Origin: Eutreptiella sp. 'Long Island Sound 2002'
Taxonomy: Eukaryota > Protista > Euglenida
Direction: 5' to 3'
NCBI GenBank assembly: GCA_964036045.1
Contig: OZ038378.1
Coordinates: 11,098,001-11,162,000, forward strand
DNA: 64,000 nt
Shown: positions 4,685-60,934 of the stretch, piece after piece
How the letters are laid out: each line of letters begins with the position of its first letter
How positions within the stretch are numbered: position 1 is the first letter of the stretch
Notes under the pieces: model-generated
What the model was told of the DNA's origin: nothing
Database searches by the model: none
The model's input: the letters and a program-made list of their open reading frames with translations, nothing else
Made by a program: the position numbers and the translations under genes

Positions 4685-5394
4685 GAGGGTGCCCTCAGCG
4701 CAGTGTGCGCACAGTGCAACTATTTGAGCGTTTGGTCGTATTAGAAACCCATACTTTGTGATACTAGGGGCATAGCTGTTGTTTGACACCAGGTTTTTGA
4801 TGCTTCTTCTGCATTGGGGGTATGGCGGATGTGAATTTTCACCCAATTTCACCTATTTTCACTTTTTTCTACACATTCTTTGCTCATTTCTCCGCATGTT
4901 CTGCAAGCGGTGAAAATATTGGCCGTGCAATGGTTGGAACCCTAGGGGGAACAAATTTTTTTTTCCGGATGAGGATGCACACCTCCGGACTGATTCCCGG
5001 TGGTGCAAGACGGTACTGAACAATCTCAACGTCCAGGCATCCACTTGTGTGCCCTACACTCGCACGTCTAACCTTCTATGCGAGAGACAGAATCCTGTGG
5101 TGGAACAGGACCTCAGGGTTCTGATGAAACAAGTACCAAAAATTGGGTATGACTCTTGCCTTGGGCTGTGATGACCATGAACTCCGGGAAGAGTTCATCA
5201 ACGGGGTTCGTGGTTTCCGTTTTGCAAACTGTCTTCTGGGAAGGGAAGGTAGCTTGCAACTGTCTCAAGCTAGGGTAGCTGGGGTGGACGAGTTTTGAGG
5301 GCGTTTGGAAAGGGTGTGTCTAGGGCTGGTTGGGGGGGTGGGGGGGTTAGTCTAAAAGTAGCGTGCAATGCGCGCGCAATGCAAGGGTCCCCCC
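4685..5394 (+). mobile_element. 3-bp-TSD cargo-carrying element, copy H1 (710 bp)
   Basis: Short G-rich/C-rich TIR (GAGGGTGCCCT...AGGGTCCCCC) and TSD CAA (CAAG is also possible). GCGCAGTGC-like repeats at both ends. Left ~170 bp and right end (TAGTCTAAAAGTAGCG) are shared with 25675-26408. Confidence 0.75.
4968..5210 (+). pseudogene. Retroviral/Gypsy-type integrase core (rve) fragment inside element H1
   Basis: Translates DEDAHLRTDSRWCKTVLNNLNVQASTCVPYTRTSNLLCERQNPVVEQDLRVLMKQ, then (frameshift) STKNWV*LLPWAVMTMNSGKSSSTGF. This matches the D..~35..E / PY..SN..ER.N / W..LLPWA..N...TG pattern of LTR-type integrases. Confidence 0.75.
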
Positions 5395-8229
5395 CAAGTC
5401 AGACCTCTCTGCCGAAGTCGCCTGTCAACGCTAGTGAGTTGTCTGACAGCACATATATTCCTCCCACTGCCTGCTTGTGTGCTTGTGTGGGAAGGCGGTA
5501 GTCGCGTTCATCTGCAACAACGATGGCCCGCAGGGCACTCATTTGTTGTTGCACATGAATTGGGGTTCACAGGGCTGTCCTTGAGGTATGTGATTGTCCC
5601 CTTTCTTTCCGTTGAGGTATTTGGTGGCAGGATTGCGATGGCGGATAGTGGATAGCGCTTCAGCGTGCCAGACGCTAGTGTGGCGTATTTGTGCCCAACC
5701 CCCCCTTTGGCGTGCTAGTGGGCGGAGCTGTTGTTGAGCGAAGCAACTGCCGAAGTCAAACATGAAGAATCTACGGCCTCTGGGGGGCTTTTCAGGTGGT
5801 GCTCGGGACTCCCGGTTTCACTCCCGGGGACAGTTGAGTAGTTGTGCCCAACGTAGGCCTCAACCCCGGGAATTTTGCTGTAGGAGCTGGGTGCTACGGC
5901 CCATTGCTGCGACCGGGGGGAGGGTGCTGGATGAGTGCCCACTGTGCAGCTGACCAATGTTTGGGTCATCATTGTTCAAATAAAGCACCTCCCAAACCCA
6001 TGGTGAGGCTGAAGTCCATGTTGAGCGCGGAAGAGAGACGTGTATCAGTGCACACAAATGCACTGCCTTAATACAGTCGCAAAGGACCTCAGGAGACAAT
6101 ATACTAGAGAGGGTGGATGAAACATGGTGTAGGCAGGTCGCTAGTTGGTAGCCAGCAAACTGTTGTCACGGAATTGAGCAATTGACAGCCAGGTAACGCC
6201 CCATTGCCAGAATAGACAACCGCATTTGGACACGGAGAGTGTTCCCCAATTCCGTAGGCCGTGCCACTCTTTTTTGTGAAGTGTAGATTTTGACTTCCTT
6301 GGCATCCTTCAAAACTCTTTTTTCTTAGGTTATCACACTGAAAATGCAGATGTCTTTTTTCTTAAGTCTTCTCACACTCTAGTTCGTGATGTATAAGTAA
6401 ATACAATCTGAATCATGGAGCTAGATGACGATAGCCCCAGTGAGAGGACCCATTCCCAAACGTATGAGTAACCAGCGTCTCAATGAGGGACTGCCAAGAC
6501 ATGTTCTGTGGTTTAGAACAATGACCGTATCAGTCATTGGTTCCGAAGTTTGTGGGGCGCACCAACGTGAGCAGTCGTCCTTCTGGATATGCACCCAGAC
6601 TGTGGCGGTGCAGCAGAAGATCCGGTTGCTGGGTGGCTGATACCGTCTTGTCTTGAGTGTGGGGCACGCTTCTTGTGGCATCTTGTACCACCCGCCTCTG
6701 CGCACCTCCTTGATCTGACGAACTCCAAACAGGTGCGGACCCTAATTCTTTATATTGACCATCAGGGGGGGTAATAACCAATGAGACAGGATACTCGAAG
6801 ACATTAACCACCTGCATCTAGGGGCGTTACGGCCGTCGTTACACCTGTTGAACAAAGTGCACGACCCAATCGTGGCCATACAACACACAAGATTGTGTGG
6901 AGGCAGCAATGGTTTGATGGTCATTAAATTGTGGCCCCCAAATGGCTCGAGAGTCTCACCCCCCAATCACTCAATGTGTGCATCGACACGGATGTGTTCG
7001 GACCCACCAGGAAGTGGTATCTCCAACAGCTCCCACCACACATTGTGGAAACCTTGAAAACTCTGTTTTTTCCCACACCGGGGTGTTCCGAAACAGCAAT
7101 CGAGCACTTCGTTCAGTGCATCCCAAAGATAGTCGAAAGCTTTTGGTCGCGTAAGCCATGCATCTACAGGCACCACCACGGGGTGAGCAGGAACCAGAAT
7201 GCCTACTCCAAGATGAACGAGGAGCCTCTGCTAAGGCGCAAGGTGGGAGAGCATGGTGGTTCGTATATAGAGACCTTGGCATATGCTGCACGGATCGGGT
7301 CGCTTCAGTGGGTGCCTGCATGCTGCGTGTGACTTGGTGAGGACCCTTCTCACTTCCCGACAAGTGCAGCATCTGAACATCTGTATGAGCCCAAGCTGGC
7401 TCATGCACTGGGGGTCCTTTGATAAACTTATACTTGATATTCTCGGGAGGGCACTGGGGCAAGAACCAGCTTTGATTGCAGTAATCGTTCGAACACAAGC
7501 CGAATGTCACAGATTCCTTGGGCAGGCAACAGTCATTTCCAGAGATGGAAAATCATTGTATGGGAGGAGATGAACTCCATGGTCCATCTATAGTCCTCAA
7601 ATGTCACACCTGATGTGTTGGAGCACATACATTCCGTGCGCAGCTAGTGCATGGTGCGGGAAGCACCCCCGCGGTCGGGTGTCTAACAGGCACAACACAA
7701 ACGTTGAAATTGCCATAGTTTTGCAAGGTTTTTACGGTATTACCAATGTCAAAGCCTTCATCGTCGCAGCCTTTTTGTGGGGTATGCGCCCAGCGGCTGA
7801 CCCAAACCCTAATCGGAGCTGCGGTGCACAGGAAGCATTCCGATGTGATATCACACGAGCATAGTCATATGACACTGAGCCTTGCATTGTCAAGCGGTAC
7901 ACAACTAACTGAAAATAGGGGCTTTCGCAGACGAAAGACGCCTAGGGCTGCTTTGCAGCTCTTGGGGGGTCGTCTCCAACCGCTTTTCTTGTGCTCTTTG
8001 CTCTTGTTTTTGTTGTTCCTCATGTGTGCGCGTTTCAAGACTGACACTGGGGTGAAAACTACAATCATTGCAAAGATTGGGGTGCGCTCAATGACTTCAC
8101 CTTGCTTGTATTAGTATCCCAAACGGGTGTGTACCACTTGGTCTTTGTCACAAAGCTCTCACAGCGTGTGTGTCTTTGTGTGTCTTTGTGTGTCTCTTTC
8201 TCAGTGGCTATTTTTTTGTCATCTGCAAA

Positions 8230-11183
8230 ATGTTCTATGTGGGTGCCACTTTGCAATCAGTGTACGATGATCGTCGAAGCTTCGTTGGAGAGGCACAGCA
8301 CGACGATCCCCATGGGACTGAAATCCAACAGAGCCCAGCCGAGACCAGCGAAGGTACGGGAGCCCCGCTTCAAGAAGCCTCCAGGCAAGTCACTGCAGAC
8401 TGTTTTGTGTCGAACGATACCATGTGGGACCTGCAGCAGGAGTCAGTCCGAGACAGCCCAGGGCTGAGTCCAACTGCGTCGGGGGAGTCGTGGAGAACGA
8501 AGTCCCAGACTGTTGACCAACTTTTGCAGTTGAAGGATGAGCAACTCTGCAGCACTACGATTCGGGAGGAATGGGGCACGAACCAAGTACTAACCTCTGC
8601 GCCCATCTCCACACCCAAACATGAGTCCCAAAGCGCGAAGCCTGACCCAAAGCCTGACCCGAAGCCTAACCCATCCCAGCCGTCAGACCAACCGGTTGCA
8701 GCCGAGGCCATACCTGACCCAGAAGCAGAGGTGATGGTGGACGACGCGGAAGACGAAGGGATTTCGCAAACACCCCCAAATCTGGACATGCCGGATCTAG
8801 GCGAGTTCACCTCCCAAACGTCCTCTTCACCAGAGCTCCCCACCCCTTCTACCCCTCTTACTTTGACGCCTACCTCAAGCCAACAAACCTCACAACCTTC
8901 TCAATCTTCGACGGCTTCATCGGGGCCGTCTAGTATTGGTGATATAGATCTGTCCCAAGATTGGGATGAGGTAAAGAGACAGATCCACAAAAGTTACGGA
9001 CGCGGATTAGCTAGCTCGAAGAGTCACTTGCCGAGAAGGACTCGCTCTCCATGAAGCTCAAGCTGCAGCTGAAGGAGTATCAAGCAGGGATGGAAGAGAT
9101 GGCCCTGAAGCTCAAGATCTCTGAGGCTCAGGTGGATGCCGCCAAAAAGGCTGAACCAGAGAAACGCACTTCCAGCGGGCGCAAGGGCGACCCTGAGGCC
9201 GGGATGAAGCAGATGGAGCAAGTTGCCAAGTACTATGAGAACAAGTACAAGGAGATGCAACAGCAGCTGCTTATTCTTAGTGGAAAGGCTGGGCAGAAAT
9301 ACGCGGCGTTGCATGTGGCGGCGAAGCGGCTCCAGAACGATTTCCGTTCCACCAAAGTGTACCTCAAGTTTAAGATCCAGTCGACACTGGACGACATTAT
9401 TGCTGATATCAGCAGCGCTCAGCTCCCGGATTTACCCGTCCCTGAACTGCCACCACGACCACCACCTGCTCCTGCTGCTGACCCCCCCACAGCTCCATCC
9501 CCTGCCGAGCCTAGTATTCCGATTCATAAAGTTGCCAGGCTGGAAGAACAGCTCGTGCTGCTCACAAACACGCTCAGCGCAATGCAAGAAGGCACTGAGA
9601 ACACTTTTCTTGACGACTCTGATGATCCGAACGCCCGCTTCGATTGTGCCCTTGAAAACTTTGCAGGCCTCAATAGGCAGCTGCTGGAGGCTAGTCATCA
9701 GATGGTCACGAAGCTGTTGGTGAAGGATGTGGAGAGCAACGACCGACGAATCGCGGACTTGGAGGGCCAGAATGACCAGCTGAACGAGGAAATCATGGGC
9801 TTCATCCAGCAAGTGGAGGCCTCTCAGAGCCGAGCAGATCCCCCGAAGCCCGAATCCACAGAGATCGGCACTGAAACTGAGGAAAACCAGCGGCCCTCCC
9901 CCCTGCAAACGGAGGAGACAAGCGGCTTGTGCAACGTCCTGTGCGCCAAGTGCGGCATTTCGCTTGCCCGAGCCCACGCGCCGGACCAAGACATATCCGC
10001 CGCCATTCGCGCGCTTTCCGATTGCGTGGATCCGGGCGACGGTTGGCAGCTCCGGGAGTTCGCGGAACAAGTCGACTGCGTTGCGCAAGCGCTCCAAAGG
10101 ATGCCGCGCCCGCGCTCTCCGAAGTGCAACGGCCGGAGCCACATCCCCGACACTGAGCAGCGGGCAGTCCAGGCCCTGCATCGTTGGCAGGAGAAGCAGC
10201 TGATGCTTGTGCAGCGGCGGCAACGGATCTTAATGTCCACCTGCACGGTCCTCCGCTAGTCCGTCATGGGCGGGGCCATGGCTGCTGCCGACCGAACTGC
10301 CACCAGCCCATCCGCCTCTAGGCCCCGCGCTCTGTCCCGCGCCTCTGTGGACAAGTCCTTCCGGGGGCAGCCCTTTTCCCACCTCAGCTTGAGCCTGACC
10401 GCCCCTACCGGCGCTTGGTCGCCCCAATCCGGAGGCAGTGGCACGCCGTCCGGCTCCCCCGTGGCCGCCGTCTGCCACCTGCAGACCACCGGCCTTGCCC
10501 TCTCCGCCACCACCAGCCCCACAGTGTGCCGCGCGCTCTCCATCATCGGGTCGCCCCAACACGCCCTGGTGATGGCCAACAGCGGGAGCAGGGGCCGCAG
10601 CCCGCTCACCTTCAACGTCGGCACCAGCGTGGCCGTCCCGCGCACGTCCCTCCCCTCCTCCCCTGCGTTGCCCCGCTCCCGCTCACCTCCGACGCCGGAG
10701 TCGAGGCCGACCCCCGCGGCGGACGGGCCACCGCGCCACTGCAGCCCAACTTCGGTGGCCAAGGCCCTCACGCAGGGCCGCAGTGGCTTCAGGCTGAGGT
10801 CCCTCCCCTCCGCCCAGAGCGCCTCGCAGCCCGCCACACGCCCAAAGGCAGGGCCGGACACCCCCAGGCCCGGCAGGTGCCCCGCGAGCCGAAGTGCGTC
10901 GATGGAGGCGGGGCGGAGCCCTGCGCGCCGGACGGGCTCTTTGGAGGTCTTCGGCCTGACCCAGCACCGCCGCAGCGGGTCGCGCGCTCCCGGGGCCGAG
11001 ATGAATGCGTCGGGCAGCCGTAGCAAGTACGCGTTGGACTCCCCGCAGCACTCGGACGAAGCGGAGCGCGGCCCGGAGCCCAAGGCCGCGGGCAGTGACC
11101 TGCCTCCCGTGTCCTCGCCGCTCCGGAGGCGGGGGGCGGGGCGTGCGGCGTCCTCGCCTGACGGGGCCTTCTTCGGAGTGTGA
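8230..11183 (+). pseudogene. Large low-complexity/coiled-coil protein gene (~980 codons), interrupted by one frameshift (~8998) and in-frame TAGs at 9012 and 10257
   Basis: ORF 9051-10259 and ORF 10266-11183 are in the same frame, separated only by TAG. The frame of 9051 reads upstream as TRIS*LEESLAEKDSLSMKLK. Coding-like codon bias throughout and heptad-like segments. No recognisable catalytic domain. Confidence 0.65.
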
Positions 11184-11695
11184 GACTCACGGGGGCTGTG
11201 TGACACCGGCGATGGGTCGGGGGACTGCGGGCCGTGGGCAGTGGGCCGTGCCGCGAGCCAAAGACCACGTCAGGGCCCATCGACCTCGCAGACGCCCCCA
11301 ACACCCCGAAAATTTTGTTGCCCCCCCTCCGGACCCCCCTCCCCCCCCCCCTGGCCCACGCCGTGGGGGTTTGGGGTCCATAGCCGCTGCGGTGCACAGT
11401 TCTATGACGCAGCAACGCATGTGGAATGTCCCCATGAGTCACCTCAATCCGTACGTAATGTGCCCGTGAGTTACATGGCCACGTTTAAAAGTGCTGTCGG
11501 TGACTCCTACACTCGTTTGTGCATGCTGTGCGGTGGTTTCCAACTGCAGATTCTGGTGTCAGAGTCAGCTCATCCTGCACTACGAGTCAGATCCGCTACC
11601 GCGGTCATTTGTGGGATCACCGTAGCACCGGACAGCTCTGTACCTTCAAGGGTTGTCTAGACTGGTGAGCAGGCCACACCAGCCTGTCTTTGTCT

Positions 11696-12306
11696 GCCCC
11701 ACCCCTTCAACAAGAAACATTGAGTTTACGACACGTAGAACTCTCACAATTTTTAGATTCTGCAGCCACGTCTATCCCTTGCGTCTGCCCTGATCAGTCG
11801 CTACTCGGAATCGACGCAATTCATGAACCCACGATAGCCTGCTGCATATCTCACGATATTGGCAAGCAGCAGTAGCGTCACAGGGTGTGTGCACGCATGC
11901 CACACGAGATTCTTACCTGGAATTACTTCATTGCGATGACTCTTCAAATAATCATCAGCAAACGCTCACCAGTTGCGTAGCAAAGGCTGTCGCTGGAATG
12001 CCCGTCTGGACATCTTCTGATCCGAATGTTGGCCACTTTGATGCAGGAGGTAGACACTCGTCTCACACAGCAAGTCCAGCGAAATTTGGCGAAGCTGCCA
12101 GAAACCAAAATTTTAGGTGCAGCACTGATTGAGGAGTGCCCTGCAAAGTGGAATGATAACTATACAGCTAATACCACATAATAGGCTTTATTTTATGCCA
12201 ACCTCCAAAATTTTGATCCCGCCCTCCAAGTCGGGTAAAACGCGCTGCCGACACGCTCACCGACTTGTTGGCCGCCAGGTTTGCCGACTCGGGGGGGGGG
12301 GGGGAT
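11696..12306 (+). mobile_element. 5'-truncated transposon relic inside the tandem unit (repeated at ~14516-15127 and ~18474-19085)
   Basis: Ends in GCCGAC subterminal repeats plus poly-G plus TTTG, like the right ends of the CAACC elements. A decayed frame reads ...KILGAALIEECPAKWNDNY, loosely resembling the hAT LIxDxxTRWNSTY motif. No left end or TSD found. Confidence 0.35.
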
Positions 12307-15300: not shown

Positions 15301-15675
15301 TTGAGGGCTTCCGAGGAGAGAGCATTGGCCGAGCTTTCAGCCCAACAGCGGCACGGTGTGCGGATGGTGCCCGCGAGGTCACAGGGCTCAGGGGCGTTCA
15401 ATGATACTCTCAATGGGAGGTCGAAGATCAGTGAACCCAACAATGACCATCATGGAGGAACGGTTTCCAATGACAAAGGCACAGGTACTGATGCCAATGC
15501 TCATTCAAGACTCCCAAGAGGCCTTGCCGTCTGACCAGATCCCATCCATGAAACATTCCATAGCTCACAGGGCGAACTCAAGGCAACATTCAGAACTGGT
15601 TTCAAGCCGACCCGGAGGCATACGGTAGCTCAGTGTCCGTTGCTTCATATGCCCCAGAAAGGACCCAGGGTCCCT

Positions 15676-16809
15676 CAACCCCCCCCCCCATTTCAGCGGC
15701 CGAATTTGGCCGATTTTGCGGAATTGGTATGCCGAATTGTTGGGTTTCTGAATCTCGCCGATTTGTTTTGCCGAATCACTAGGTTTCTGTAACTTTGCCG
15801 CCTCGTTTTGCCGATATGTTGGGGTTTCTGGGTTCTGGGTCACCTGAGTTGGAGGCGTCACTTACTTTGGGACACTGCATAATACCTTTTCTTTGTATAT
15901 TGGTTGTCCAGATTGGCACCATGAAGTGTTTCTACTGTCCACAAAAAAACGTGTCTTTGGTCCCCTGGGATTCGTTGTCCTCCGCTGATCAAGCTTTTCT
16001 TCGGGACAAGTATCCTGATGCCGGTGAGGGGGCAGTTTTCGAATTTTGTGTTCGCTCTGCACGACCCAGTGCGTTCTTCAGCCGCCGTTCTTCGGGCAGC
16101 TCATCATCAGGCCCCCAGTCACTGGATTCCGGGCTACTGGTGCCTGCAGTGGATTCTGTAGCTGTGTCTGGGGAGTGCACATGAAAAAAAAAGCGCCGCA
16201 AACTGAAACGGTGGGACCAAGTTGCCCCCAGGACACTTCCAAAAACCTGTTTTGGACTCTGGGGAGGTTTCATCATTTTTCTGGGTGACCCCGGCCCGAC
16301 TCGGGCTCGGGTTTCAAAAATATCGTTGAACCAATCAACGCCGCTTGGAGATTCAGAAAGTGCACAGTTTTCCCGTGCACATGAAAAAAAAAAGCGCCGC
16401 AAACTGAAGCGGTGGGACCAAGTTACCCCCCCCAACACTTCCAAAAACCTGTCTTTGACTCTGGGTCCAGGTCAGAAAATTGGTCAGAAAATTGACCCCA
16501 GAGGGGTTTGAACCAGGGTAACCCAGTTTTCGGCGTGCTATCGCCCGACACTGCAACCATTCAATCAAGCATTTTCGCTTTCAAGATGCCATTTTTCGTC
16601 TTATACAATCAGCAGGATGCAAATTTTTTTTCAGCTAATAAGGGTTTCCACATGTCTCTGACAACACAGCAACCAAAGGGACAGTGTGTTTGGGCCAGGG
16701 GCCAGGGCCATAATCCTGGTGACTGGGAAGCATTTCGCCGAAAAATAGGCCCGCCGAATTGTTCTGCCGAATTGTTGGGATTTCTTCGCCGAATTGGGGG
16801 GGGTGGTTG
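15676..16809. mobile_element. CAACC...GGTTG DNA element C1 (1134 bp), 6-bp TSD GTCCCT, inserted in tandem copy 2
   Basis: The empty site CAGGGTCCCTTTGGG is present in copies 1 and 3. GTCCCT is duplicated at 15670-15675 and 16810-16815. Offset change of 1140 = 1134 + 6. GCCGAATT repeats at both ends; internal ~90-bp direct repeat (~16172 and ~16374). Confidence 0.92.
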
Positions 16810-25674: not shown

Positions 25675-26408
25675 GGGGGCGCCTTAAGCGCAGTGCGCGT
25701 GCAGTGCGCGCGCAGTGCAACTATTTGGGCGTCTAGCCGTAGTAGAAACCCATACTTTGTGGTACTTTGGGCATCATTGTTGTTGGGTAGTAGGTTGTGA
25801 TGCATTGGGGATCTGGCATTTTTGGATGTTCACCCTGTTTCACCCATTTCTACTTTTTTTGCACACATTTTTTGCCCATTTCCACCACATCTACTCCTTT
25901 TCTCGGTTGATTGATATGGTGATACACTTTGAGGGTGCCTGCTACAGGACATCATGCTTCCCTCCTCATTTCTCAGGCCCATTTTCTCCCTGGATCTCAG
26001 TATTGGGGATGGGGTGTTCTACACCCGCTCCAATGGCCTGCGACCTCCTGCCACGGTGGTTGGGACGGCTGAAGACGGACTCCTCCACTTGGAATACTAC
26101 CAAGATGAGTTGAGAGTGGTGAATCGGCAATGCAAGATGGAGTCCATCTCCTTTGCCAACCCAAGTTCAGACTCGCCACCTAATTGCCCTCCATCTCCGC
26201 TGCCCAACACACAGTCAAGTACCCCCCCGAAGGCCCCTGGTCCTTCACCATGCCACAAGAACCAGGAAGGTCCCCCTCAAGGTCCCCTCCAGTCCGGTTT
26301 GAGTCGCCTAATTCTAAGGGTGTTTCCAAGGGGGTTGCCCAGGGGCTCTTTGGGGGGAACATAGTCTAAAAGTAGCGCGCAGTGCGCGCGCAGTGCAAGG
26401 ATTCCCCC
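25675..26408 (+). mobile_element. 3-bp-TSD cargo-carrying element, copy H2 (734 bp)
   Basis: TSD TGA at 25672-25674 and 26409-26411. TIR GGGGGCGCCTT / AAGGATTCCCCC. GCGCAGTGC repeats at both ends. Termini homologous to H1. The interior encodes LSIGDGVFYTRSNGLRPPATVVGTAEDGLLHLEYYQD (Tudor/SH3-like beta-barrel look), unrelated to the H1 interior. Confidence 0.8.
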
Positions 26409-32956: not shown

Positions 32957-33689
32957 GGGAATGCCATGCACGCAGTGCGCACGCAGTGCGCACGCAGTGC
33001 GCACGCAGTGCGAAGTTTTGGATGTCGGCAAATACTTGAACCCTAGTTTTGGCCCCTTTTCACAAGTTTTTGGTTCCGTACCAGGGTTTTTTTGGCTTCC
33101 CAAGCATTTAGGATGTGGCATATTTGAATTGTCAACCATTTCCCCCTAGAAGAGGCCCATCGACAAAGTGTACACAGTCAACACGGCCCGGATCTCGACG
33201 TCGTCATTGCCGACACTGCAGCGAGCCTCGTATCCGTAGAGGCGGTTCAATTCGCCCTGCAGAGTACTCTTCCCGACAGATAGTACGTGCACCAAAACCT
33301 TGGTCGACTTCAAGGTGATTCTCGAACCGAGATGCTCAAGGTCATCGACCGGTATGGCCACGTCCACAACTGCAGAGAAGTCAAAGTGGTCATCGTCGCT
33401 CGAAGGCTCTCGATCGCCGATACTCAATGGTGGCGAGTCGACACCAGGACCGGACAGTTCTTCTTCGACGATGCTGTTGGTTACAACTACAACCAGAAGT
33501 ATCGATGGACACCTAGCCAACCCTATGGTATTGACACCTTTCAGTCTTCCCTCTAGTAAACAGGTGACAGGTATTCTTGGGTGAGTATCCTAGCCTCTGC
33601 GTGCGCAATATGCACGCAGTGCGCACGCAGTGCACACGCAGTGCGCACGCAGTGCGCACGCAGTGCGCACGCAGTGCAAACACTTAGCC
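32957..33689 (+). mobile_element. 3-bp-TSD cargo-carrying element, copy H3 (733 bp)
   Basis: TSD TTA at 32954-32956 and 33690-33692. Begins GGGAATGCC and ends CTTAGCC. GCACGCAGT tandem repeats at both ends. The interior is a C-ending-codon-biased plus frame: DLDVVIADTAASLVSVEAVQFALQSTLPDR*YVHQNLGRLQGDSRTEMLKVIDRYGHVHNCREVKVVIVARRLSIADTQWWRVDTRTGQFFFDD. Confidence 0.85.
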
Positions 33690-34967: not shown

Positions 34968-36112
34968 GGAGGAGTGGCAGCGCGCCGGGCATCCTTTTAG
35001 GCCACTTTTGACATGGAGCCGTAATCTAGGCTTCTTGTGTGGCCCCTTTCCAGTTGAAGATATGGGGAATGCCCCTTTTCGCAAGTTTTTTCTTCAATAC
35101 CCGGATTTTTTTTTCAAGCTTCTTATGCATTCTGGATGTGGCATATTTGAATTTTGGCACCCATTTTTACCCGTTTTCAACCATATTTACCCATTTCCCA
35201 TCCCTCTTTTCTCCCCACTATGGGGAACCCGAGAAGGTAGGGGCGGTGTAGCCGTATTGATCTATCCCCACCATGGGGACCCCGAGAACCCCGGGGACCC
35301 CGGGGGTGATGTAGCCATTCCGCCCACAAGAGGGCCCCTGAGGCGGCAGGGGTGATGTAGCCATGCTGAGTGATAGGGGAAGCCAGAGCATCTACATTGA
35401 TCGCTTCTGGGCGCAAGTGCTAAGCAAGTACCTTCAAGGAACCCAAGGCCATCCCGAGCTCTGCTTCAGTGGTTTCAAGGCGGATTCATGTCATTGTGCC
35501 ATTCATTGGAAGAAGAATGGAACTTTGACGGCCCGCCAACTGTCGTACAATGATGTGCATGGGTGGTATAAGGCACACATTCAACATTTGTTTGGATAGT
35601 TGTGTGTCGATCTAGCGTGGCGGCCCTAATGAGTTGCACTAATCCGTGTGTGTTTTGTTGCATTTCACGCAATTTTGCGTTCGGAGGCAGGTCCGTCACC
35701 CACCTTATGGGCCATGGGACCATGTCGCGCCTCATGTTTGGACTGATGAAAGCAAGTCAGCCGCCACGCAAGATGAGGGAGAGGATGAGGCAGATGTGTT
35801 TGTGTTATGCTGCTAGAAGCGCTCCACCATCACAGTTTGTCGTGAGTTCTCTGAGTGAGAATGTACTGATGCCCACACTTGTGGGGAACAAGTTGTTTAT
35901 TCGGCAATACGTGATGGACACACATTGATGTTGAATTTGACTATTTGGACTTTATGCAACGTGCTTTGTGGGGAAGGTTTGTGTGGTCCACCCTAGTCGA
36001 CTTGAGGGGCTCCTCTGGGGGAGGGTAAATCTGGTGTTAAAGCCGGGATAGTTAATACAAAAGTAGCGCGCCGGGCGCATGCCGGGCGCGCGCCGGGCAA
36101 ACAACCCCCTCC
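34968..36112 (+). mobile_element. 3-bp-TSD family, divergent longer copy H5 (~1.14 kb)
   Basis: GCGCCGGGC terminal repeats. The right end AAAAGTAGCGCG matches H1/H2. The left internal motif GATGTGGCATATTTGAATT...CTCCCCACTATGGGG matches H3/H4. Exact ends and TSD (CCT/CCC) are uncertain. Confidence 0.65.
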
Positions 36113-36536
36113 CCCCCATCCTGGGCGGGGGGGGGGGGTTTCCGGGACCTCCAATCCGCCGTGGATGGGATTACCTAGTCCCGGTACAAGACAGTAGGCG
36201 CAACAGGTGTCCCTTTGCTCTGCATCTTTGCTTTGCGCTTCAATGCTTGCTGATGGAGAGAAAACTTGGATGAACTCGGGTTGTAGTGAGTCCAGAGCAC
36301 CATTCGTCTATGACATTATGGAACATAATTGTAGAACACAGCCCCAAAAATTTCCTACCCGGAGGTCATTTCCTATGGTTTTGTTCACCTCACCCTGCAC
36401 CTGCATTGGTGATACACACCTTTCACTCGCTGATGCGAATGCTTGAATCAATGCAAATTTTGGGATTGAGGCTAAAATCAACATTATTTTTGGTTGAAAG
36501 TAGTCTTTTTCCTTTTGCATTGCTGCATTGTTGCAT

Positions 36537-47222: not shown

Positions 47223-47390
47223 GGTGTGCACAGACATCGCCCTTGTCAAAACAACAGGAGGTGTTGTTGCCGTCATTTTCAGTGCTTATAGCCTTGTTCT
47301 CGCAGGGGCGGGGGAGGGGGTAGATGATTACGCATCCTCACTGGGAATCCTCAAGACTCCTCGGGGGGGCTGCTTCAAGCAGTTCAGCAA
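47223..47390 (+). CDS. Putative XRN-like exons 47223-47260 and 47324-~47390 (VCTDIALVKTTG|DDYASSLG...)
   Basis: Splicing a 63-bp GT-AG intron gives DIALVKTTGDDY, resembling the XRN 'DF.LL....GNDY/F' motif. The upstream phase is not matched, so an exon may be missing. Confidence 0.4.
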
Positions 47391-53300: not shown

Positions 53301-54013
53301 TGTGGGTACGGGGGGGGGGGCTAGTCCTAGAAGAGGGGGAGTCTACATGTTCGCTCATTTGCTTGTTGTCTCCATTTGTTCGGGAAAGGAGGACCACCTG
53401 CTGTGTTACCATGCGGGTCCTAGTGCCTGAAGTTCTCAACCTCCAGCGCCCTCCCCCCTTGTGTGAGTGGAGGGACCTCGCTTGCCATGTGCCAGCATGC
53501 AGCAAGGGTGCGAAGGTTGTGTTGGAGGCCAAGGGGTGTGTGTGTGTCGGGTCTGTCACCCATTCGGCCCCACTGTCGGGGTGGGGTGGGGGGGGGGGGT
53601 AGAATACAAATTGACATGTTTTGCTGCCTCCAACCCTGCTTAGGGCCGGGTATGGCCCACTCAAAACACACAAAATCACTGTTTGGACTGAAGATAGTAT
53701 AACAACTGCTCCAGCACTTTTGGCCCTCAGTAGCTCAACAATTGAAAATCCCAAAACCTATATTGTGAGTACTCACAATGATCAACTATCCCGTGTCAAG
53801 CATGTTCTAGGCCCTCTTTATGTGTTTTGTCTTCTATTTGGCCAGTGGGTGCTGTGTGGGTCCCAGGGGATTGGTGCACAGCAGTTTTCACCCTCAACAG
53901 CTCCAAAATCGAAGATTCTACAACACAGCCAGTCCCAATGATCAGACCTCGCACATCATGTGAACCAGTCTTGGCACCTTAAGAGGGGTTCATCATTATG
54001 TGCCAAAAAAGTA

Positions 54014-54544
54014 AACCCCCTTGTGTAAGAAGACAGAGCCAAATAAGAAAGACTCATGCACATTCTTATTTTGGAGTCCAAAATAAGAAGACGCACAGAG
54101 ACCCAGAGCCGCAGCACCATGCCTTCCTTAGAAGCAACAGAAGGATGCTCTGATTGTGTTTCTCAACCACCAGAGGATTTTGTTTGCTTCTTCTGCGAAA
54201 AAGGTGGTCATGGACACGTACTTGGGCAGTGCTGCGGATGTTTCGTTCAGGGGATTCGTTTGATCGTGCACACCGTCAAACTCTGCACTAGAGGCCTCAC
54301 ACACTTGTCCTCCTCTTCCCCATCTGCGTTTGGTTGCCAGAATGTGTCCACAACAAGTTCATCATGTTGCCGTGCTTCATCACATCAACAAATGCATCAG
54401 ATTTTTCCATGTTGTATGTCATATGGCACCGCAGGTCTGAAACAAAGGGTGTCAAAGGGGGGAGGGTCAAAGTAAGAAGACACACCAAATAAGAAGATGC
54501 AAATAGATAAGAAGACGCGCATCCTCTTATTCGAGGCGGGGGTC
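54014..54544. mobile_element. TA-flanked non-autonomous DNA element (~530 bp) with AATAAGAAGA subterminal repeats
   Basis: TA|AACCCCC...GGGGGTC|TA. AATAAGAAGA-type motifs cluster at 54025-54090 and 54470-54530. Confidence 0.55.
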
Positions 54545-56834
54545 TAGCAGACTCCCTCACTCTTTGAGGTGCCTTGCCGGAGGCAATAGAATTATTGCCA
54601 CTTGGAGTTTTCACAAGTCGGAGCAGCCAAAGTTTTTCACAGAATTGTTGGTGGATTCAACTTTACGTTGAACACCATGGGCCAGTTGGGCTTGGTTTTC
54701 TGTTGGTTTCTTTTGGGAAAAACTTTTTTCACACAGGGACCTGAGGCTGCTCCCAACAGGCTACCAACAGGTCAGTCATGGTTCTGCATTGTGATGTGTA
54801 TTCATCCACGTGGTGTTCACTTACCTAGTGCAACGTGCCCCTAATGGGCATTTTACCACCCAGGTTCCGGCTATGGAGAACAAACATGCAGACAGTCACA
54901 CTCTGCATTAGTGGTGGGCCACGATGGTCTCTGTCTTTTGCTCAGAACCAATGGGAATGATGCCCAGCATTTGCAGCTGCTGTATGCCATTGTGCGGCAA
55001 GTGAATGAGTATTCCTGCGGAGGCACCAATGATGCAGATTTCATTTTCGACATCCCTTCTGGTATCCTCTGCCACCCGCCTTATCCGCCTTGGTGTGGTT
55101 CGTACCTCCTCTCCCTCCAACCCAGGCCCCTTCCTATCCCTTGCGTCCAGCATTCAGCGCTTTGATCAAGTGGTGCGAGAAAGTCAATTATTTTTGAGTT
55201 CCAGCGACTCAGCTCTTCTGCCGTGGACCGCACGATAGCGATGCAGTGTCGATGCGAAAACTATATTGTTGTGGTAAGAGACATGTAATTCTGGATTGTG
55301 GAGATATGCTGTTATGGTGCACCACCATGTCAAAATCTTCGTTCACATGGTTTTTCTGGCAAGATGCCGGAGGGGCATCCATTGACCACCCAACTGATCT
55401 CCAAGCCGCTGCATCGGCACCACACAACATGGGTGAGCATTGGAACAGTTGTCTTCTCACTTCACGGTTTGGTTTCAACCCAAGGCTGTCTGGTGCAATT
55501 TATCTTACATGAGCTGTCGCTTTTCCTTCTTGTTCTCCTCATGTTCCAGGCCTTGGGCATGACGGGCTTTGGCTTTGCTTTTGTGGTGGGTTTCTGTGGA
55601 ATTTCACGAACCAGCCGCCAGCACGTGATTGCCTTTCGGTGCACTGGAAAGGCCCAGTAGGCATGCGGCCCCGGGCACTCAAACACTCAAAAGTCATTCT
55701 TCCAACATGCATGAAGCACCAATCAGCCGCTCGACACGTATTTCGCGTCTTCAAAGTGTATGGCTCTTCTTCAAATAATTTTCATAAAACCGAAACCACG
55801 TTTCCCGGCGTATCTCCTTGTTTCCTCACCCCAATGGGCAAATGGGGAATCACAATGGTAACACATTCAGCTGCACACCGCACCATGGTGTCTTCTTTTG
55901 GGACCACTTGTTTTTGTTGATGTGCATATGATAATGTCTGTGCATATCGGTGCATATCGTTGATGTGCGTATGATGCTGTTCCATGTTTCATGTATGCTG
56001 TTTTGCACCTCCTTCATGGAACGCTCTTTGTATCTAAAAGGGCCCTAAAAAAAAATGAGGTCCAGCATCAGCTCCAACATTTGACGGAGCATGCATCCCA
56101 GAAATAGGAAGATGGGTCCCATGAAAACATGGGCAGCTAGAGTCTGTCGAACTGCAGTATTCACCAAATGTAAGCTGCACAATGAAATGTTATGTGCCCC
56201 TGAGTCAAATGTGTGTGAATGGACAGCGAAGCTTCTTGAATAGGTTAGCAAAAGCTGTAGTGGCCCGTTGCGTGTTGGAATTTCTGAATTTTATTGCAGC
56301 ATTTTCAATGGGTTCCGGGAAATCAATCCCACACAACATGAACCCGCGCAAATTTGATGCCACACGAAGCCCTCCCCCTGTGCACTTCATTTCAAGTGCC
56401 ACGCGTGTACGTTTGGCAGACCATTTGACAAGAGTGCAAAGGAAGTGCCCAGGTTGACCTCTTGACAACGATTTCATTCAACCCCCAAGCTTCTCGCCTC
56501 GTTTTCGACGTGAGATGTCTCCAACATTTTGCCGAGTGAATAGCCTTGCTACTTCTGCAGGCTGTTGTGCCACTGATGCCCCCCAGCTCCAGAATGCCAT
56601 ATCCAGCCATAGAGTGTTAGGAGGTTCCAACATGGCGGTGCCCCAGGCTGCTGGGGGAAGTGCATGTGTTCGCACCCCCGAACACCACAGCTCGAAATTT
56701 GTCGTCTTTTGGCGGGCCATGTGCTTAGCAAGGTTTCCCCACCCTCACCAAGTAGGTTGTCTTTGTTGTTGCAAGCAGCAGCAGCAGCAAAGGTCTTCAC
56801 GCTATTCCCGTGCAACTCCTTGTGGTCCCCTCAG

Positions 56835-58946
56835 GGACGGTTTTCACAGCGCAGGGGCTGCTGTCTGCCGTGGAGAACGCCGCGTCCGACTCTTCCAAAA
56901 TTGAGCAGCGCTGGGTCAGTGCTCTTTGTGGTATGGATTCACAGTGCACGTGCGGGTGCACTTCCGACATTGTATCCGGCGGGACGAAGGAGGCCACCTG
57001 AGGCTAAGCAGAGCAGATTCTGGGCGTCCATAAACAGAGATGGCTGCGGTAGCATGTTGCTCATGGCGCATTGGAGCATTTCGCGTGGCAGGGTGTCCCC
57101 AAACGGGTGTTCTCGGCGAGTTGCTACTTTTAAGTTGTGGCTCCATTTGCTTGAGGGAGTTGTGCGTTTGGGAGGCGGGGTACAGGCGGGGGTGCAAGGG
57201 GTCATCGGGGTTACTGCTGCAGTATGCATTCTGCATTATGCGTTTTGCATGTGTGTGCTGGTGTGTGTGTGTGTGTGTGTGGGAAGGCGGGGGAGGTGGT
57301 TGTTTCAAAGAGGCGTGGAGTGTAGGTGGCGGGGGGCTTATCGGTTAGGGCAGGATTGTACATGCAGAGCAGGGAATTTGGGCTCTCCTTCCAGTATGAG
57401 TCGCCCTGTTTAGCCTTTGAACTAGTGAGTGCGCTTCCCCGACGATTTCTGGGCAGTTCAGTCACCATCTGTTACTCTGGGGGCTCCAAAGGGGAGACGT
57501 GTGTTTCCAACTCTGATTGAGCGGGCCGGATATCTTGAGACCTCCTCGTTTTACGCACACGCCAAGCACGGACTATTCTTTCGAAGAAGAGGTGAGCCAC
57601 GCAATCCCAAGACCACTTCAGCCCCCCCCCCCCCCTGGCCCCAAGAGTCCATCAAAGGAAAGGCGACAAAACAAACCGCCAGTGCAAGGGTTTGCCACTA
57701 CTCCACGGTGCGGCATTCAGGTGGCCAGCGCTCCGTAGCCTAGAAAACACGTTCCCCCCATTCACTACCACCTGCATGTATACAGCGACCCTTGCCACCT
57801 CTGGGGCACGCACTCCCATACCTAGCTCTCCTAAGCAGCAAGCCAGGCGTTGTCCGGACAGGGTCGCAGCCCTTCGCGTCATTCACTCGGTCCGGTTTGC
57901 ACCTGCCTGATTAACCCGCACCGCTTGACTGACCTTATCCAGCTCAGTGAGCTCAATCACCGCCCCTGTGTTTACACACCTCAAGCAGCCTGAACATATT
58001 GTTGCGGCTCGGTGTGGGCCTCAAAGTGCAGAGTCAATGCAAAAAAAGCGGGGAATTTGGTCTGGAGGAGGTTTGAAGGGGGCGATATTGGGGGGATGTT
58101 TACAGGCCCAGGGTTGTGCTGTAGGACCAGGAAGAAGTTAATAGATGCAGGGCAGGCGACAGTGGGTTGTTGTGGTTTGGCGACGTATGGGTTCCACTAT
58201 CGTGGTGCGTTCCACAGGGCAGCGTAGGAGGAGGGCGGGGGGGCGCTCTACAGCAACAGCCATCTAGACCTCAACTCCGTATTGGACATCCTCTCGGAGG
58301 AGGAGGGGGAGGGGGGCGGAGCAGGGGCCCGCTGTACCACATTATGGGCTAGAATTTGGTGGAAAGGCTGCCACATTGCGGGATGAAGCCATGGCATTGG
58401 CAGCAGCGCTGTTCGATCTATTTTCACCTTTGTGAAATATCCATTGTGTGTGCCAACCCAAAATCGATTGCCAGCATTGGCAGCAAAGAGGTACTGCAAC
58501 GTGGCAGCAACACCCCTTAGTGACTTGGCAACAAATTACTGTTGCACTGTGGCAGAAGCACACTGCACTACAGCAGCAGCCATCTGCTGCTTTGCGACAG
58601 CAAACGTGAGCTGGCATGCAACACGCTGGCATGGCACGACACACCACAGTAGCGCAATCCCATATCACGTCCTGCGCTACAAGCTTTGGTCGTGAAGGGG
58701 GGTGAGGAGCGAGCACTGGGCTGCGACAGCTGTTTTACCTTCTCTGGGCTTTGGGTGGGCTGCGTTCGCTACGCATGTGCACTCTTTGTGTAACAGGCCA
58801 AAGGCCATCGCCTACCCTGCAGAGCATGCAGCGTTTAGGCTCTCAGACTGCGGTTTCGTTGGCGGTCAGTCTGCCCCCCGACCTGCTCTATTTGGCATGT
58901 CACGATCTGCAGCCTTTAGTACAGCAAGCAAACCTGCTGGATTCAG
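56835..58946 (+). CDS. Putative distal exons of the XRN-like gene: 56835-56914, 57395-57424, 58797-58946
   Basis: Each has AG/GT boundaries. The last encodes AVSLAVSLPPDLLYLACHDLQPLV, similar to the XRN 'QLLAVLPP....L....LM' motif. The first two join as QRW|YESPCLAFEL. Linkage to the upstream exons is inferred. Confidence 0.4.
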
Positions 58947-59199
58947 GTGGACGCCTATCTATCCAGGGATGCATCAAGGATGCTTTGTTCCACCGATCCG
59001 AGAGAGCTCGTAGTGTTGTGGAGGCTTGTCCTGGGCCGGTTCAGCTGAAGCATGGTTTTGAGGGTCGGTGAGGGTCCAAGCGCAATGGGAGCCGAGAGGG
59101 CTGGCCAATGGCAACCACCTGCTGCAGCACAAACCCTTAGCCCCGTCTACAACCCACTGTGCGGATGCGAATGCATGGGCACTAATGTCCATGGGTCTG

Positions 59200-59940
59200 T
59201 AGGGTGGTTATGCACTGACACAGACTCGGGTGTATCGGTTGTGGGGGTGAGTATGCTTGAAGACAGTTTGAAGGTAGTCCGAGTTCTTGCAGATATGCAT
59301 GTGTATGCTTGGAAACGTGTACACGTGTGTGTATACATGTACAGGTATACTAAAGCTATGTCTCTCTAGGTAGTCTGGGTTTACGCATTCACATATGTGC
59401 GCACGCATGTAGACATTGTGCTCCAACTTGCAGATAGTGTGCACATATACGTTTACCCGAGTGTAGTCTGTAGACGCTGTGCACACATGTTGTAGATGCG
59501 AAGAGACGATATTGAGGATGGGGCGCGAATCGCCCCCCCCTTAAAAAGGGTTGCATAGGTCTGTTTACCGGGACTTATGCACGCCACATTAGGGCTGTGA
59601 GTGGGCGAGCCAAAGCTCCAACGATAAGACCTTCTCCGGGAGGCTACGCCAGTCCAAAGAACACCTACCTACCTACCTCCGTTTACCCAAGTGTTGTCAG
59701 TGAGCACTCTGCATGCATGTAGAGAAAACAGTACGTATACATGTGTACATGAACATGTGTATAGGTGGAAAGATTCTTGTGTAATCACGCATTTCCGTGG
59801 AAACGTTTTCGTGTCTACACATATGTGTATACGCACGTATACCTGTACACGCATATGTCCGCATACGTATAAACACGTATACGCAACATATACACAATTT
59901 ATACGCGTGTACATTTACACATGTACATGCGTATGCGTAC
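59200..59940. repeat. Degenerate TA/CA/GT-rich low-complexity tracts (59200-59490 and 59700-59940)
   Basis: Alternating purine-pyrimidine text such as ACATATGTGTATACGCACGTATAC. Confidence 0.7.
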
Positions 59941-60190
59941 AGCACTCCGTCCTCGAGAGACCCAGCCAAAAGAGAAACGGCTCCTAAGAGGCCGAGCCAC
60001 AAGCACAGGTGTTCCCAAGAGGCCCTACCACAAGAGACGGGGCTCCCAAGAGGTCCAGCCACAAGAATATGGTTCTTGAGAAGCCCGGCCTCAAAAGAAC
60101 GGGCTCATGAGAAGCCCGGCCACGAGATAAGGGACTCCCAAGACACCCAACCACAAGAGAAGGGGCTCTCAAGAGGCCACTACAGATGGG

Positions 60191-60934
60191 GGGAATGCCA
60201 TGCACGCAGTGCACACGCAGTGCGCACGCAGTGCAAAGTTTTGAATGTCGGCCAATACTCAGACCCTACTTTTGGCCCCTTTTGACAAGTTTTTGGTTCC
60301 ATACCGGGGTTTTTCCTATGCATTTGGGATGTGGCACATTTGAATTGTCACCCTTTGTTGCCCAATGTCAACCATTTTTACCCATTTTCCATCCCCCATA
60401 TTGGACTCTCCCCACTATGGGGACCCCGAGAAGGCAGGGGTGATGTAGCCATACATAGCCCGCGGACCTTGAGGAGTTTGTGGTACGGCCTTCATCCCCA
60501 CCACATCACTGATCTCGCTCGCCATCAACAAGTGTGTCGCGTCCACGCTCAGAATCACCACCGCCCTCCCCTTCACCCTATTCGCGGCCCCCATCACCCA
60601 AGAGACCACGGACAATGCGGCCCCGCGCTTCGAGTCAAGGGACACCTCATCGCCGCCTCCAAGAGCGAAGCCACGGGCACCGAAACACTCGAAGCAAGCG
60701 GACTTTACAAGGCTGAGTGGTTTGTTCATAGGGACAGTGGAGTACCAAGTTGAAGGCAGTTTCGTTGTTCTCATGTGGGCTTTGCTGCTTCGCTGTGCAA
60801 CCAGTCAGGTGACAGGTATTCTTGGGTGAGTATCCCGGCCTCTGCGTGCGCAGTATGCACGCAGTGCGCACGCAGTGCCCACGTAGTGCGCACGCAGTGC
60901 ACACGCAGTGCGCACGCACTGCAACAACTTGGCC
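60191..60934 (+). mobile_element. 3-bp-TSD cargo-carrying element, copy H4 (744 bp)
   Basis: Begins GGGAATGCC and ends CTTGGCC, like H3. TSD GGG at 60188-60190 and 60935-60937. GCACGCAGT repeats at both ends. The interior (plus frame TSLISLAINKCVASTLRITTALPFTLFAAPITQE...) is unrelated to the H3 interior. Confidence 0.85.

What the first reader, a model, noticed from the sequence alone, without database searches (positions are those of the whole stretch)
4685..60934. Pack-type transposon family: five copies with shared ends and 3-bp TSDs, each carrying different coding cargo
Seen in sequence: H1 (4685-5394), H2 (25675-26408), H3 (32957-33689), H5 (~34968-36112) and H4 (60191-60934) share tandem 9-bp terminal motifs (GCGCAGTGC, GCACGCAGT or GCGCCGGGC). 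They also share a GCATT.GGGAT.TGGCA..TTTG.AT motif ~130-190 bp in, short G-start/C-end TIRs and 3-bp flanking duplications (CAA, TGA, TTA, GGG; H5 unclear). The 300-700 bp interiors are mutually unrelated. In H1-H4 they are sense-oriented coding fragments: an LTR-type integrase core, a Tudor/SH3-like piece and two codon-biased unknown fragments. Established: GG-start TIRs with 3-bp TSDs point to PIF/Harbinger, and gene-fragment capture is known for Pack-MULEs and Pack-CACTA. Inference: this is a Pack-type capture system, apparently without the TWA target preference of PIF, in a protist genome. I cannot tell whether it has been described.
Basis: partly seen in the sequence, partly recalled or inferred. 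Interest (0 to 1): 0.75.

Follow-up and report, generated by a model that had tools for sequence, protein, structure and literature searches.

The report
Decayed Harbinger transposon copies, not gene-stealers
The five look-alike insertions are real short copies of a very abundant cut-and-paste (PIF/Harbinger-type) jumping gene of a Euglena-like alga. Their differing middles are leftovers of the element's own gene or scraps of other repeats, not captured host genes.

Summary
Observation confirmed. All five elements sit at the stated coordinates and share arms with tandem end repeats (period 11 bp, not 9). Four have perfect 3-bp duplications; H5 is unclear. In 57 genome-wide copies, 53 had a perfect 3-bp TSD, against about 1 at control offsets.

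The PIF/Harbinger call is supported. Longer relatives with the same ends encode a DDE_Tnp_4 transposase. The target is a relaxed palindrome, WC|WNW|GW, and only 7 of 53 TSDs are TWA.

The Pack-type reading is mostly not supported.
- H2 carries the 5' end of the element's own gene, a Tudor-like barrel.
- H4 carries own-gene 5' and 3' pieces, and probably a linker piece.
- H5 carries a decayed piece of the transposase C-terminal region.
- H1 carries 238 bp of a Ty3/gypsy integrase.
- H3 carries 411 bp of another high-copy repeat (2,434 candidates).

No host-gene cargo was found. Each interior defines a subfamily rather than a unique capture. H3's cargo has at least 640 copies. The H2 Tudor 24-mer has 1,366 hits, which include longer elements of that lineage.

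The scan had already reached the same family and much the same verdict on other DNA of this genome (s1-213121 and others). I saw those notes only after my own analysis.

No full-length autonomous copy could be read.

The parts
4685..5394 (+). H1: old, low-copy family-A-type non-autonomous element. TSD is CAA (4682-4684 and 5395-5397).
   Evidence: Relatives L082-L084 are 72-82% identical across the whole element.
4968..5205 (+). H1 interior: 238-bp sense fragment of a Ty3/gypsy (chromovirus-type) integrase core.
   Evidence: 77% nucleotide identity to a high-copy repeat with 2,173 candidates. The L085 ORF 750-2720 (minus) is integrase plus chromodomain-like pol and carries the matching residues. 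No Pfam hit for the fragment itself.
25675..26408 (+). H2: family-A MITE-like deletion derivative. It runs GGGGGCGCCTTAAGC...GCAAGGATTCCCCC, with TSD TGA.
   Evidence: Copies lie about 2.7% from their consensus.
25990..26160 (+). H2 interior: start of the element's own gene. The ATG is mutated to CTG in this copy. It encodes a Tudor/SH3-like barrel and is followed by a Pro/Ser-rich linker.
   Evidence: Same N-terminus as P0176, P0183 and P0201. It is fused to DDE_Tnp_4 sequence in P0073 and P0116. AF2 gives a 5-strand barrel with pLDDT 72-82. Top matches are Tudor domains. The subfamily consensus has an intact ATG.
32957..33149 (+). H3 left arm: GGGAATGCC terminus, four 11-bp units, the conserved GCATT..GGATGTGGCA..TTTGAAT motif and a pyrimidine-rich stretch.
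33150..33560 (.). H3 interior: 411-bp piece of a different high-copy repeat. The coding strand is unresolved.
   Evidence: GC content is 3-periodic. The antisense frame is open in the 33-copy consensus, and the sense in-phase frame has one stop. There are 67 HMMER hits, including longer ORFs at 36-48% identity. The P0267 family has 2,434 candidates and more than 100 full-length copies, with a typical 431-codon frame. No match to any Harbinger protein. The cargo 24-mer occurs 641 times.
33561..33689 (+). H3 right arm, shared with H4: 3' region of the autonomous element, six 11-bp units, and the terminus ...CTTAGCC. TSD is TTA.
34968..36115 (+). H5: longer deletion derivative of a sister lineage, with GCGCGCCGGGC-type end repeats. 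The right boundary and the TSD are uncertain.
   Evidence: L070 is an 85-87% identical relative.
35481..35897 (+). H5 interior: decayed fragment of the transposase C-terminal region (DDE_Tnp_4 lineage of P0044).
   Evidence: tblastn against P0044: 55% over 147 aa, E 2e-44.
60191..60934 (+). H4: family-B deletion derivative, with TSD GGG.
   Evidence: Relatives L055, L061-L063, L074, L075 and L080 are 93-96% identical.
60457..60531 (+). H4 interior, 5' piece of the element's own gene region (residues SPRTLRSLWYGLHPHHI).
   Evidence: Matches P0037 aa 25-51 at 74%, E 3e-9.
60554..60700 (+). H4 interior, probable Pro/Ser-rich linker piece of the own gene. It contains the exact 9-residue run PRAKPRAPK.
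   Evidence: P0073 aa 45-94 at 38%, E 2e-5 without composition correction. The region is low-complexity, so this is only probable.
60702..60934 (+). H4 3' region of the autonomous element plus the right-end repeats.
   Evidence: 87-89% nucleotide identity to the 3' part of longer transposase-bearing copies L074, L066 and L040, and 80% to L068.

Best explanation
The five elements are non-autonomous members of one very abundant clan of PIF/Harbinger-type cut-and-paste transposons in a 2.28-Gb euglenid (Euglena-like) genome.

Anatomy of the autonomous partner:
- It encodes, left to right, a protein with an N-terminal Tudor/SH3-like barrel, a Pro/Ser-rich linker, a Trp-rich helical region, a DDE_Tnp_4 catalytic domain and a Cys-rich tail.
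- The shared left arm of about 190-315 bp holds the terminus, a variable number of 11-bp near-palindromic units, and then a conserved stretch that I infer to be 5' UTR or promoter. In the H2 type it runs up to the gene's ATG.
- The right arm is the gene's 3' region plus the same 11-bp units.

Mechanism (inferred): the transposase acts in trans on these ends and inserts at a loosely palindromic WC|WNW|GW site, duplicating the central 3 bp.

Origin of the differing interiors:
- H2, H4 and H5 are internal-deletion derivatives that keep different pieces of the element's own gene.
- H1 and H3 are chimeras. The lost interior was replaced by a scrap of another repeat: a Ty3/gypsy integrase piece in H1, and a piece of an unidentified 431-codon-ORF repeat in H3.
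- The likely route (inferred) is abortive gap repair with template switching after excision, or nested insertion followed by deletion.
- Each variant then amplified as its own subfamily.

Shown: ends, TSDs, copy numbers, transposase family, identity of the interiors.
Inferred: trans-mobilisation, role of the left arm, and how the interiors arose.
For: Ends and TSDs: (53/57 perfect against about 1/57 at control offsets).

Abundance:
- 3,008 and 2,213 first-look candidates for the two left arms.
- 1,667 exact motif hits.
- 641 hits for the H3 cargo 24-mer.
- 1,366 hits for the Tudor-coding 24-mer.

Transposase:
- Longer copies with the same ends carry DDE_Tnp_4. L066 scores 28.7 bits against a cut-off of 24.8.
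- P0037, P0038 and P0049 score E 6e-12 to 7e-9.
- The own genome has 14,650 candidates, with open frames up to 500-502 aa.

Own-gene interiors:
- H2's ORF is the N-terminus seen in P0176 and P0201, and fused to DDE sequence in P0073 and P0116.
- A Tudor 24-mer lies 375 bp upstream of a transposase piece on the same strand at C1:22558787 and C1:22559185.
- H4 pieces. H5 piece.

Foreign interiors:
- H1. Its relative L082 still holds a transposase piece between the left arm and the integrase piece.
- H3.

Neutral decay: H2 copies show substitutions of 60/82/65 by codon position.

Target palindrome.
Against: - No full-length autonomous copy could be read. The gene order therefore rests on predicted proteins from deletion derivatives and on one coordinate adjacency.
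- H3's cargo could still lie in an unseen non-coding or accessory part of an autonomous element.
- The H4 linker match is low-complexity.
- Trans-mobilisation and the mechanism of cargo acquisition are inferred, not shown.
- The family-B terminal inverted repeat is weak: GGGAATG on the left against GGCTAAG for the reverse complement of the right end.
Confidence: 0.85

Rival explanations
1. A true Pack-type system. The Harbinger ends repeatedly capture fragments of host protein-coding genes, so each element carries different host cargo.
For: Two interiors (H1, H3) are foreign to the element and have separate parental families elsewhere in the genome. H3's cargo shows coding-like 3-periodicity.
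Against: Three of the five interiors are the element's own gene. Both foreign pieces come from high-copy repeats with 2,173 and 2,434 candidates, not from host genes. Among 86 sampled loci, every copy fell into a few recurrent subfamilies rather than showing unique cargo.
Confidence: 0.05
2. All five, including H1 and H3, are simple deletion derivatives. On this reading the integrase-like piece and the H3 piece are normal parts of some autonomous lineage, for example an accessory or antisense gene.
For: L082, a relative of H1, holds a transposase piece and the integrase piece between the same ends. No complete autonomous copy was read, so unseen regions exist.
Against: H1's piece is 77% identical in nucleotides to the integrase of a complete Ty3/gypsy pol ORF with RNase H, integrase and chromodomain context. 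The P0267 repeat is a dispersed unit of about 1.15-1.3 kb with its own copy-number profile. It shows no similarity to any of the Harbinger proteins recovered.
Confidence: 0.08
3. The short elements are kept because they do something. One possibility is that H2-type copies express a Tudor-only protein that regulates transposition. Another is that copies inside genes are removed as euglenid non-conventional introns.
For: The H2 subfamily consensus keeps the ATG and an open frame of at least 120 codons, and 9 of 18 copies are intact over it. The terminal inverted repeats would pair the ends of a transcript. Published work suspects MITE-like origins for non-conventional introns (PMC12501133).
Against: Substitutions among H2 copies are even across codon positions, which indicates neutral decay. 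The element ends do not show the published CAG(+3)/CTG(-8) signature (one search compared). No expression data were available.
Confidence: 0.05

Closest known systems
PIF/Harbinger superfamily with its Tourist-like MITEs (for example maize PIF/mPIF)
   Same: DDE_Tnp_4 transposase, 3-bp TSD and G-rich termini. Short high-copy non-autonomous derivatives share ends with the autonomous element. The extended target is palindromic, with C before and G after the TSD. From memory, maize PIF uses CWCTTAGWG.
   Different: The central triplet is relaxed (WNW or TNA; only 7 of 53 are TWA). The arms carry variable arrays of 11-bp units pointing the same way at both ends. The gene begins with a Tudor-like barrel. 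No separate Myb-like helper ORF was demonstrated.
Pack-MULE, Pack-CACTA and other Pack-TYPE elements of plants
   Same: Non-autonomous TIR elements whose interiors can hold DNA acquired from elsewhere, which is then amplified (H1, H3).
   Different: The acquired DNA here is from other transposable elements, not host genes. Most of the 'cargo' is the element's own gene. The captures are few events, each amplified to tens or hundreds of copies.
Internally deleted DNA transposons with filler DNA (Ac/Ds, P element and Mu deletion derivatives)
   Same: Heterogeneous interiors between constant ends, made of different retained pieces of the transposase gene plus occasional foreign filler.
   Different: The superfamily and the host differ. 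The deletion and filler junctions could not be examined here because the donor DNA could not be fetched.

Membership tests
PIF/Harbinger | IS5-like DDE transposase (Pfam DDE_Tnp_4, PF13359) | tested here: met
   L066 piece scores 28.7 bits against a cut-off of 24.8. P0037 scores 45.9 bits, E 6e-12; P0038 and P0049 score E 4e-11 and 7e-9. Within the window only H5 keeps a remnant.
PIF/Harbinger | 3-bp target-site duplication | tested here: met
   53 of 57 perfect, against 0-3 of 57 at five control offsets. A 5-bp reading is excluded because about half the copies lack the flanking C.
PIF/Harbinger | TWA (TTA/TAA) target preference | tested here: not met
   Only 7 of 53 TSDs are TTA or TAA, and 14 of 53 are TNA. 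The context is WC|WNW|GW. This is a relaxed form of the PIF palindrome rather than no preference at all.
PIF/Harbinger | Second gene for a Myb/SANT-like DNA-binding protein | tested here: inconclusive
   P0176 has a Trp-rich region of four helices (pLDDT 56-73) after the Tudor barrel. It has no Pfam hit and it lies in the same reading direction as the transposase. No full-length element was read.
PIF/Harbinger | Terminal inverted repeats | tested here: met
   Family A: GGGGGCGCCTTAAGC on the left against GGGGGAATCCTTGC for the reverse complement of the right end. Family B matches only weakly: GGGAATG against GGCTAAG.
Pack-type (Pack-MULE-like) elements | Non-autonomous element bounded by the family's ends and a TSD | tested here: met
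Pack-type (Pack-MULE-like) elements | Interior made of fragments of host (non-transposon) genes with a separate parental locus | tested here: not met
   H2, H4 and H5 carry the element's own gene. H1 carries a Ty3/gypsy integrase piece. H3 carries a piece of another high-copy repeat.
Euglenid non-conventional introns (MITE-origin hypothesis) | CAG near +3 of the 5' end and CTG near -8 of the 3' end, with paired ends (PMC12501133) | tested here: not met
   The ends can pair through the TIR, but neither motif is present at the stated offsets (one search compared). Removal from RNA cannot be tested here.

The most novel reading that the evidence does not exclude
This Harbinger clan may act as a carrier and amplifier of foreign DNA in a protist, in a loose 'Pack-Harbinger' sense. 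One acquired 411-bp coding-like piece has been copied at least 640 times. The constant left arm is inferred to be promoter and 5' UTR, and in the H2 type it also supplies the gene's ATG. It could therefore express truncated products, such as the Tudor-only ORF of the abundant H2 type (its 24-mer has 1,366 hits, which include longer elements). Such products might regulate transposition or chromatin.
Probability: 0.12. Interest if true: 0.55.

Novelty: new variant of a known kind. Interest (0 to 1): 0.3.

Why it matters
The result turns an apparent gene-capture system into ordinary transposon decay, which guards against over-reading 'different coding cargo' between shared ends.

What remains of interest is the family itself. 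It is a very abundant and recently active branch of PIF/Harbinger in a euglenid, and I found no paper describing it. It has four unusual features:
- a Tudor-like N-terminal barrel
- same-direction 11-bp end arrays of variable length
- a relaxed palindromic target
- chimeric subfamilies that spread pieces of other repeats

With thousands of young copies, it is a major shaper of this 2.3-Gb genome. It is also a practical source of annotation errors, because many ENA gene models are read-throughs of these elements.

Tried and rejected
Searches that found nothing:
- Pfam on ten interior ORFs.
- ESM Atlas on the H2 and H3 ORFs gave no usable hit. Recognition scores were 2224 and 1188.
- Pfam and PDB sequence searches on the H3-cargo family.
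- Papers on Harbinger or PIF in Euglena: none relevant.

H3-cargo frame: AF2 on the P0267 family gave mean pLDDT 35 and almost no secondary structure, only two short strands. The open antisense frame is therefore probably not the true protein. I dropped a guess that the sense frame is a reverse-transcriptase piece, because Pfam gave no support for it.

Non-conventional intron link: the ends lack the published signature.

Steps that were blocked:
- Fetching full-length autonomous copies and the 13.5-kb-spaced array.

Script error: my first TSD script used fuzzy anchors and misplaced the boundaries. I corrected it with exact anchors.

Sampling caveat: the top hits from the genome search are biased towards the query's own subfamily. 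I therefore used 20 motif hits taken in coordinate order from chromosome 1 as a less biased sample.
Full report
WHAT IS THERE

The window lies at chromosome 1, 11.098-11.162 Mb, of a 2.28-Gb assembly in 2,317 contigs. Earlier notes of this scan call the organism a Euglena-like euglenid. One ENA gene model is 100% identical to this genome, so the ENA proteins used below come from the same organism.

H1 and H2 share one set of arms, which I call family A. It begins GGGGGCGCCTTAAGC and ends GCAAGGATTCCCCC; H1 is a diverged version. H3 and H4 share another set, family B, which begins GGGAATGCC and ends CTTAGCC. H5 has a third kind of end with GCGCGCCGGGC units, and inside it there is an arm related to family B.

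All units point the same way at both ends. Each unit is a near-palindrome (GCAC..GTGC), so the asymmetry concerns only the central three bases. Unit number varies from 0 to 7 per end, which explains an 11-bp ladder of element lengths.

IS IT MORE THAN CHANCE?

- The two left arms gave 3,008 and 2,213 first-look candidates in the genome, with top hits 94-99% identical.
- The internal motif has 1,667 exact hits and none for its reversed control.
- With exact anchors, 53 of 57 delimited copies have a perfect 3-bp duplication. The same comparison at five outward offsets gave 0-3 of 57.
- TSD triplets are diverse. TGA, ATA, TTA, TAT and ATG lead, and only 7 of 53 are TWA.
- The flanks show a palindromic preference: W at -2 (44/53), C at -1 (27/53), G at +1 (38/53) and W at +2 (36/53). 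This resembles a relaxed form of the extended PIF target, which I recall as CWCTTAGWG.
- Because only half the copies have the flanking C, the duplication is 3 bp and not 5 bp.

WHICH SUPERFAMILY?

I took 20 motif hits in coordinate order from chromosome 1. About five were H3-type and about six were H4-type. Four were a composite type, and the rest were longer or truncated.

Longer copies with the same ends carry a transposase piece that matches Pfam DDE_Tnp_4. L066 scores 28.7 bits, above the 24.8 cut-off. A protein search of the genome with that piece found 14,650 candidates. Many were 96% identical, with open frames up to 500-502 aa, so intact or nearly intact autonomous copies probably exist.

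Word searches recovered near-full gene models: P0037 (407 aa), P0038 (375 aa) and P0049 (470 aa). They match DDE_Tnp_4 at E 6e-12 to 7e-9 and end in a Cys-rich tail.

WHAT ARE THE INTERIORS?

H5. Its interior is a decayed piece of the transposase C-terminal region from the P0044 lineage (55% over 147 aa, E 2e-44).

H4. Residues SPRTLRSLWYGLHPHHI match P0037 aa 25-51. Its last 230 bp are the 3' region found in the longer copies L074, L066, L040 and L068. The stretch between contains PRAKPRAPK, an exact nine-residue match to the Pro/Ser-rich linker of the element's protein. That region is low-complexity, so I rate this assignment as probable only.

H2. Its 143-codon frame is the N-terminus of the element's own gene.
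- ENA models P0176, P0183 and P0201 begin MDLNVGDRVFYTRSNG. They continue through the linker into a Trp-rich helical region.
- P0073 and P0116 join the same N-terminus directly to DDE_Tnp_4 sequence.
- In this copy the ATG has become CTG. The 18-copy consensus keeps the ATG at about position 315.
- One genomic place has the Tudor-coding 24-mer 375 bp upstream of a transposase piece on the same strand.
- An AF2 model built on a 17-sequence alignment gives a five-strand barrel (residues 21-75, pLDDT 72-82) and four helices (residues 120-200, pLDDT 56-73).
- Foldseek's top rows are almost all Tudor domains (TM 0.6-0.71 on the target, E 0.015-0.2). VIA-align gives Z about 7 for Tudor, PWWP and KOW barrels. 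That supports the fold but not a function.
- Substitutions among H2 copies are even across codon positions (60/82/65), so the copies decay neutrally.

H1. The stretch 4968-5205 is 77% identical in nucleotides to a repeat with 2,173 candidates. Its ORF in L085 is a Ty3/gypsy pol with integrase and a chromodomain-like tail, and it contains the matching residues. H1 belongs to an old, small subfamily: L082-L084 are 72-82% identical. L082 still holds a transposase piece between the left arm and the integrase piece. The integrase scrap was therefore acquired by a longer ancestor and later reduced.

H3. The 411-bp interior matches none of the Harbinger proteins, yet its GC content is strongly 3-periodic.
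- The full HMMER search found 67 relatives. They include longer ORFs at 36-48% identity, all from the ENA assembly of this organism.
- One of them, P0267, marks a dispersed repeat with 2,434 candidates. More than 100 full-length copies are 72-87% identical, with a typical open frame of 431 codons.
- That frame is antisense within H3, and it is probably not a real protein. AF2 gives pLDDT 35 with almost no secondary structure, the Atlas recognition score is low, and there is no Pfam or PDB hit.
- The true gene may lie on the other strand in phase. There the H3 consensus has one stop. I leave the strand open.
- The cargo 24-mer occurs 641 times, so this chimera is one event amplified at least 640-fold.

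VERDICT ON THE INTERPRETATION

That holds for H2, H4 and H5. H1 and H3 do carry foreign DNA, but it comes from other repeats, and each piece is shared by a whole subfamily. I found no host-gene cargo.

The 'sense-oriented coding fragments' are mostly explained by the element's own gene being read left to right.

The family fails the defining Pack-type feature. It passes the main PIF/Harbinger tests except strict TWA targeting, and the helper gene remains unresolved.

MECHANISM

Shown:
- constant ends and 3-bp duplications
- a DDE_Tnp_4 enzyme in longer relatives
- young, neutrally decaying copies
- frequent nesting into each other: L029 has an H2-type copy that splits a transposase gene, and L074 has an H4-type copy inside a longer element

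Inferred:
- The transposase, perhaps through its helical region, binds the 11-bp arrays and mobilises the short copies in trans.
- Deletion derivatives and chimeras arise by interrupted gap repair with template switching after excision, or by nested insertion followed by deletion.
- Other repeats would be the most likely filler in a repeat-rich 2.3-Gb genome.

EARLIER NOTES OF THIS SCAN

After my own analysis I looked up 'Harbinger'. The same clan has been reported from other DNA of this genome. The notes cover Tudor-like N-terminal fusion (s1-222844, s1-213078), same-direction 11-bp repeats (s1-199790, s1-219512) and nested GGGGG...CCCCC copies with 3-bp TSDs (s1-195187). They also cover a B-box-like tail (s1-216483) and a near-identical 'Pack-type' claim judged to be deletion copies (s1-213121). 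My results agree with these and add the identities of the H1 and H3 interiors.

LIMITS

- As a result, no full-length autonomous element and no donor copy of the H3 cargo could be read. The gene order rests on gene models of deletion derivatives plus one coordinate adjacency.
- Consensus sequences were built only inside scripts, for the two short non-autonomous DNA-transposon subfamilies of this alga, to check frames. None is reproduced here.

Noticed in passing
G000 C1:155463607-155518770 (minus); C2:13519167-13742798; C5:3289527-3369655: Copies of these elements recur at fixed spacings of about 13.5 kb, about 55 kb and about 20.0 kb. They appear to sit inside large tandem segmental duplications.
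   Followed up: no
L066, L072, L077, L078 (G000 C1) and window 34968-35256: The two kinds of left-end module occur in both orders. H5 has the GGGGGAGCGGCAGC/CCGGGC module followed by a family-B-like arm. The composite elements have the family-B arm followed by a CCGGGC-type module. This suggests that ends were swapped or acquired between lineages.
   Followed up: partly
window 35220-35365; also L068 about 1160-1370 and L070 about 590-950: A unit of about 45-50 bp (CCCCACTATGGGGACCCCGAGAAGG.AGGGGTGATGTAGCCAT) is tandemly repeated just inside the left arm in some lineages and occurs once in others.
   Followed up: no
ENA gene models P0035, P0036, P0103-P0221: More than a hundred predicted 'proteins' of this organism are read-throughs of these short elements or of their arms. 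This is a source of spurious gene models.
   Followed up: partly
G000, for example C1:78965758-78966909 (P0267 family): A dispersed repeat with 2,434 candidates keeps a 431-codon open frame in many copies that are only 72-87% identical. That frame gives no fold (pLDDT 35) and no family hit, so the real gene may be on the opposite strand. The repeat is unidentified.
   Followed up: partly
window 4685-60934: All five copies in the window lie in the same orientation. Genome-wide, motif hits on chromosome 1 crowd into 0-30 Mb and 140-200 Mb and are sparse in the middle of the chromosome.
   Followed up: no
L064 3211-3999 (G000 C1:3446842-3447630): An exon-like ORF resembling a serine carboxypeptidase S28 (PRCP-like) lies about 3 kb downstream of a truncated family-B copy. 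I judged this by eye only.
   Followed up: no
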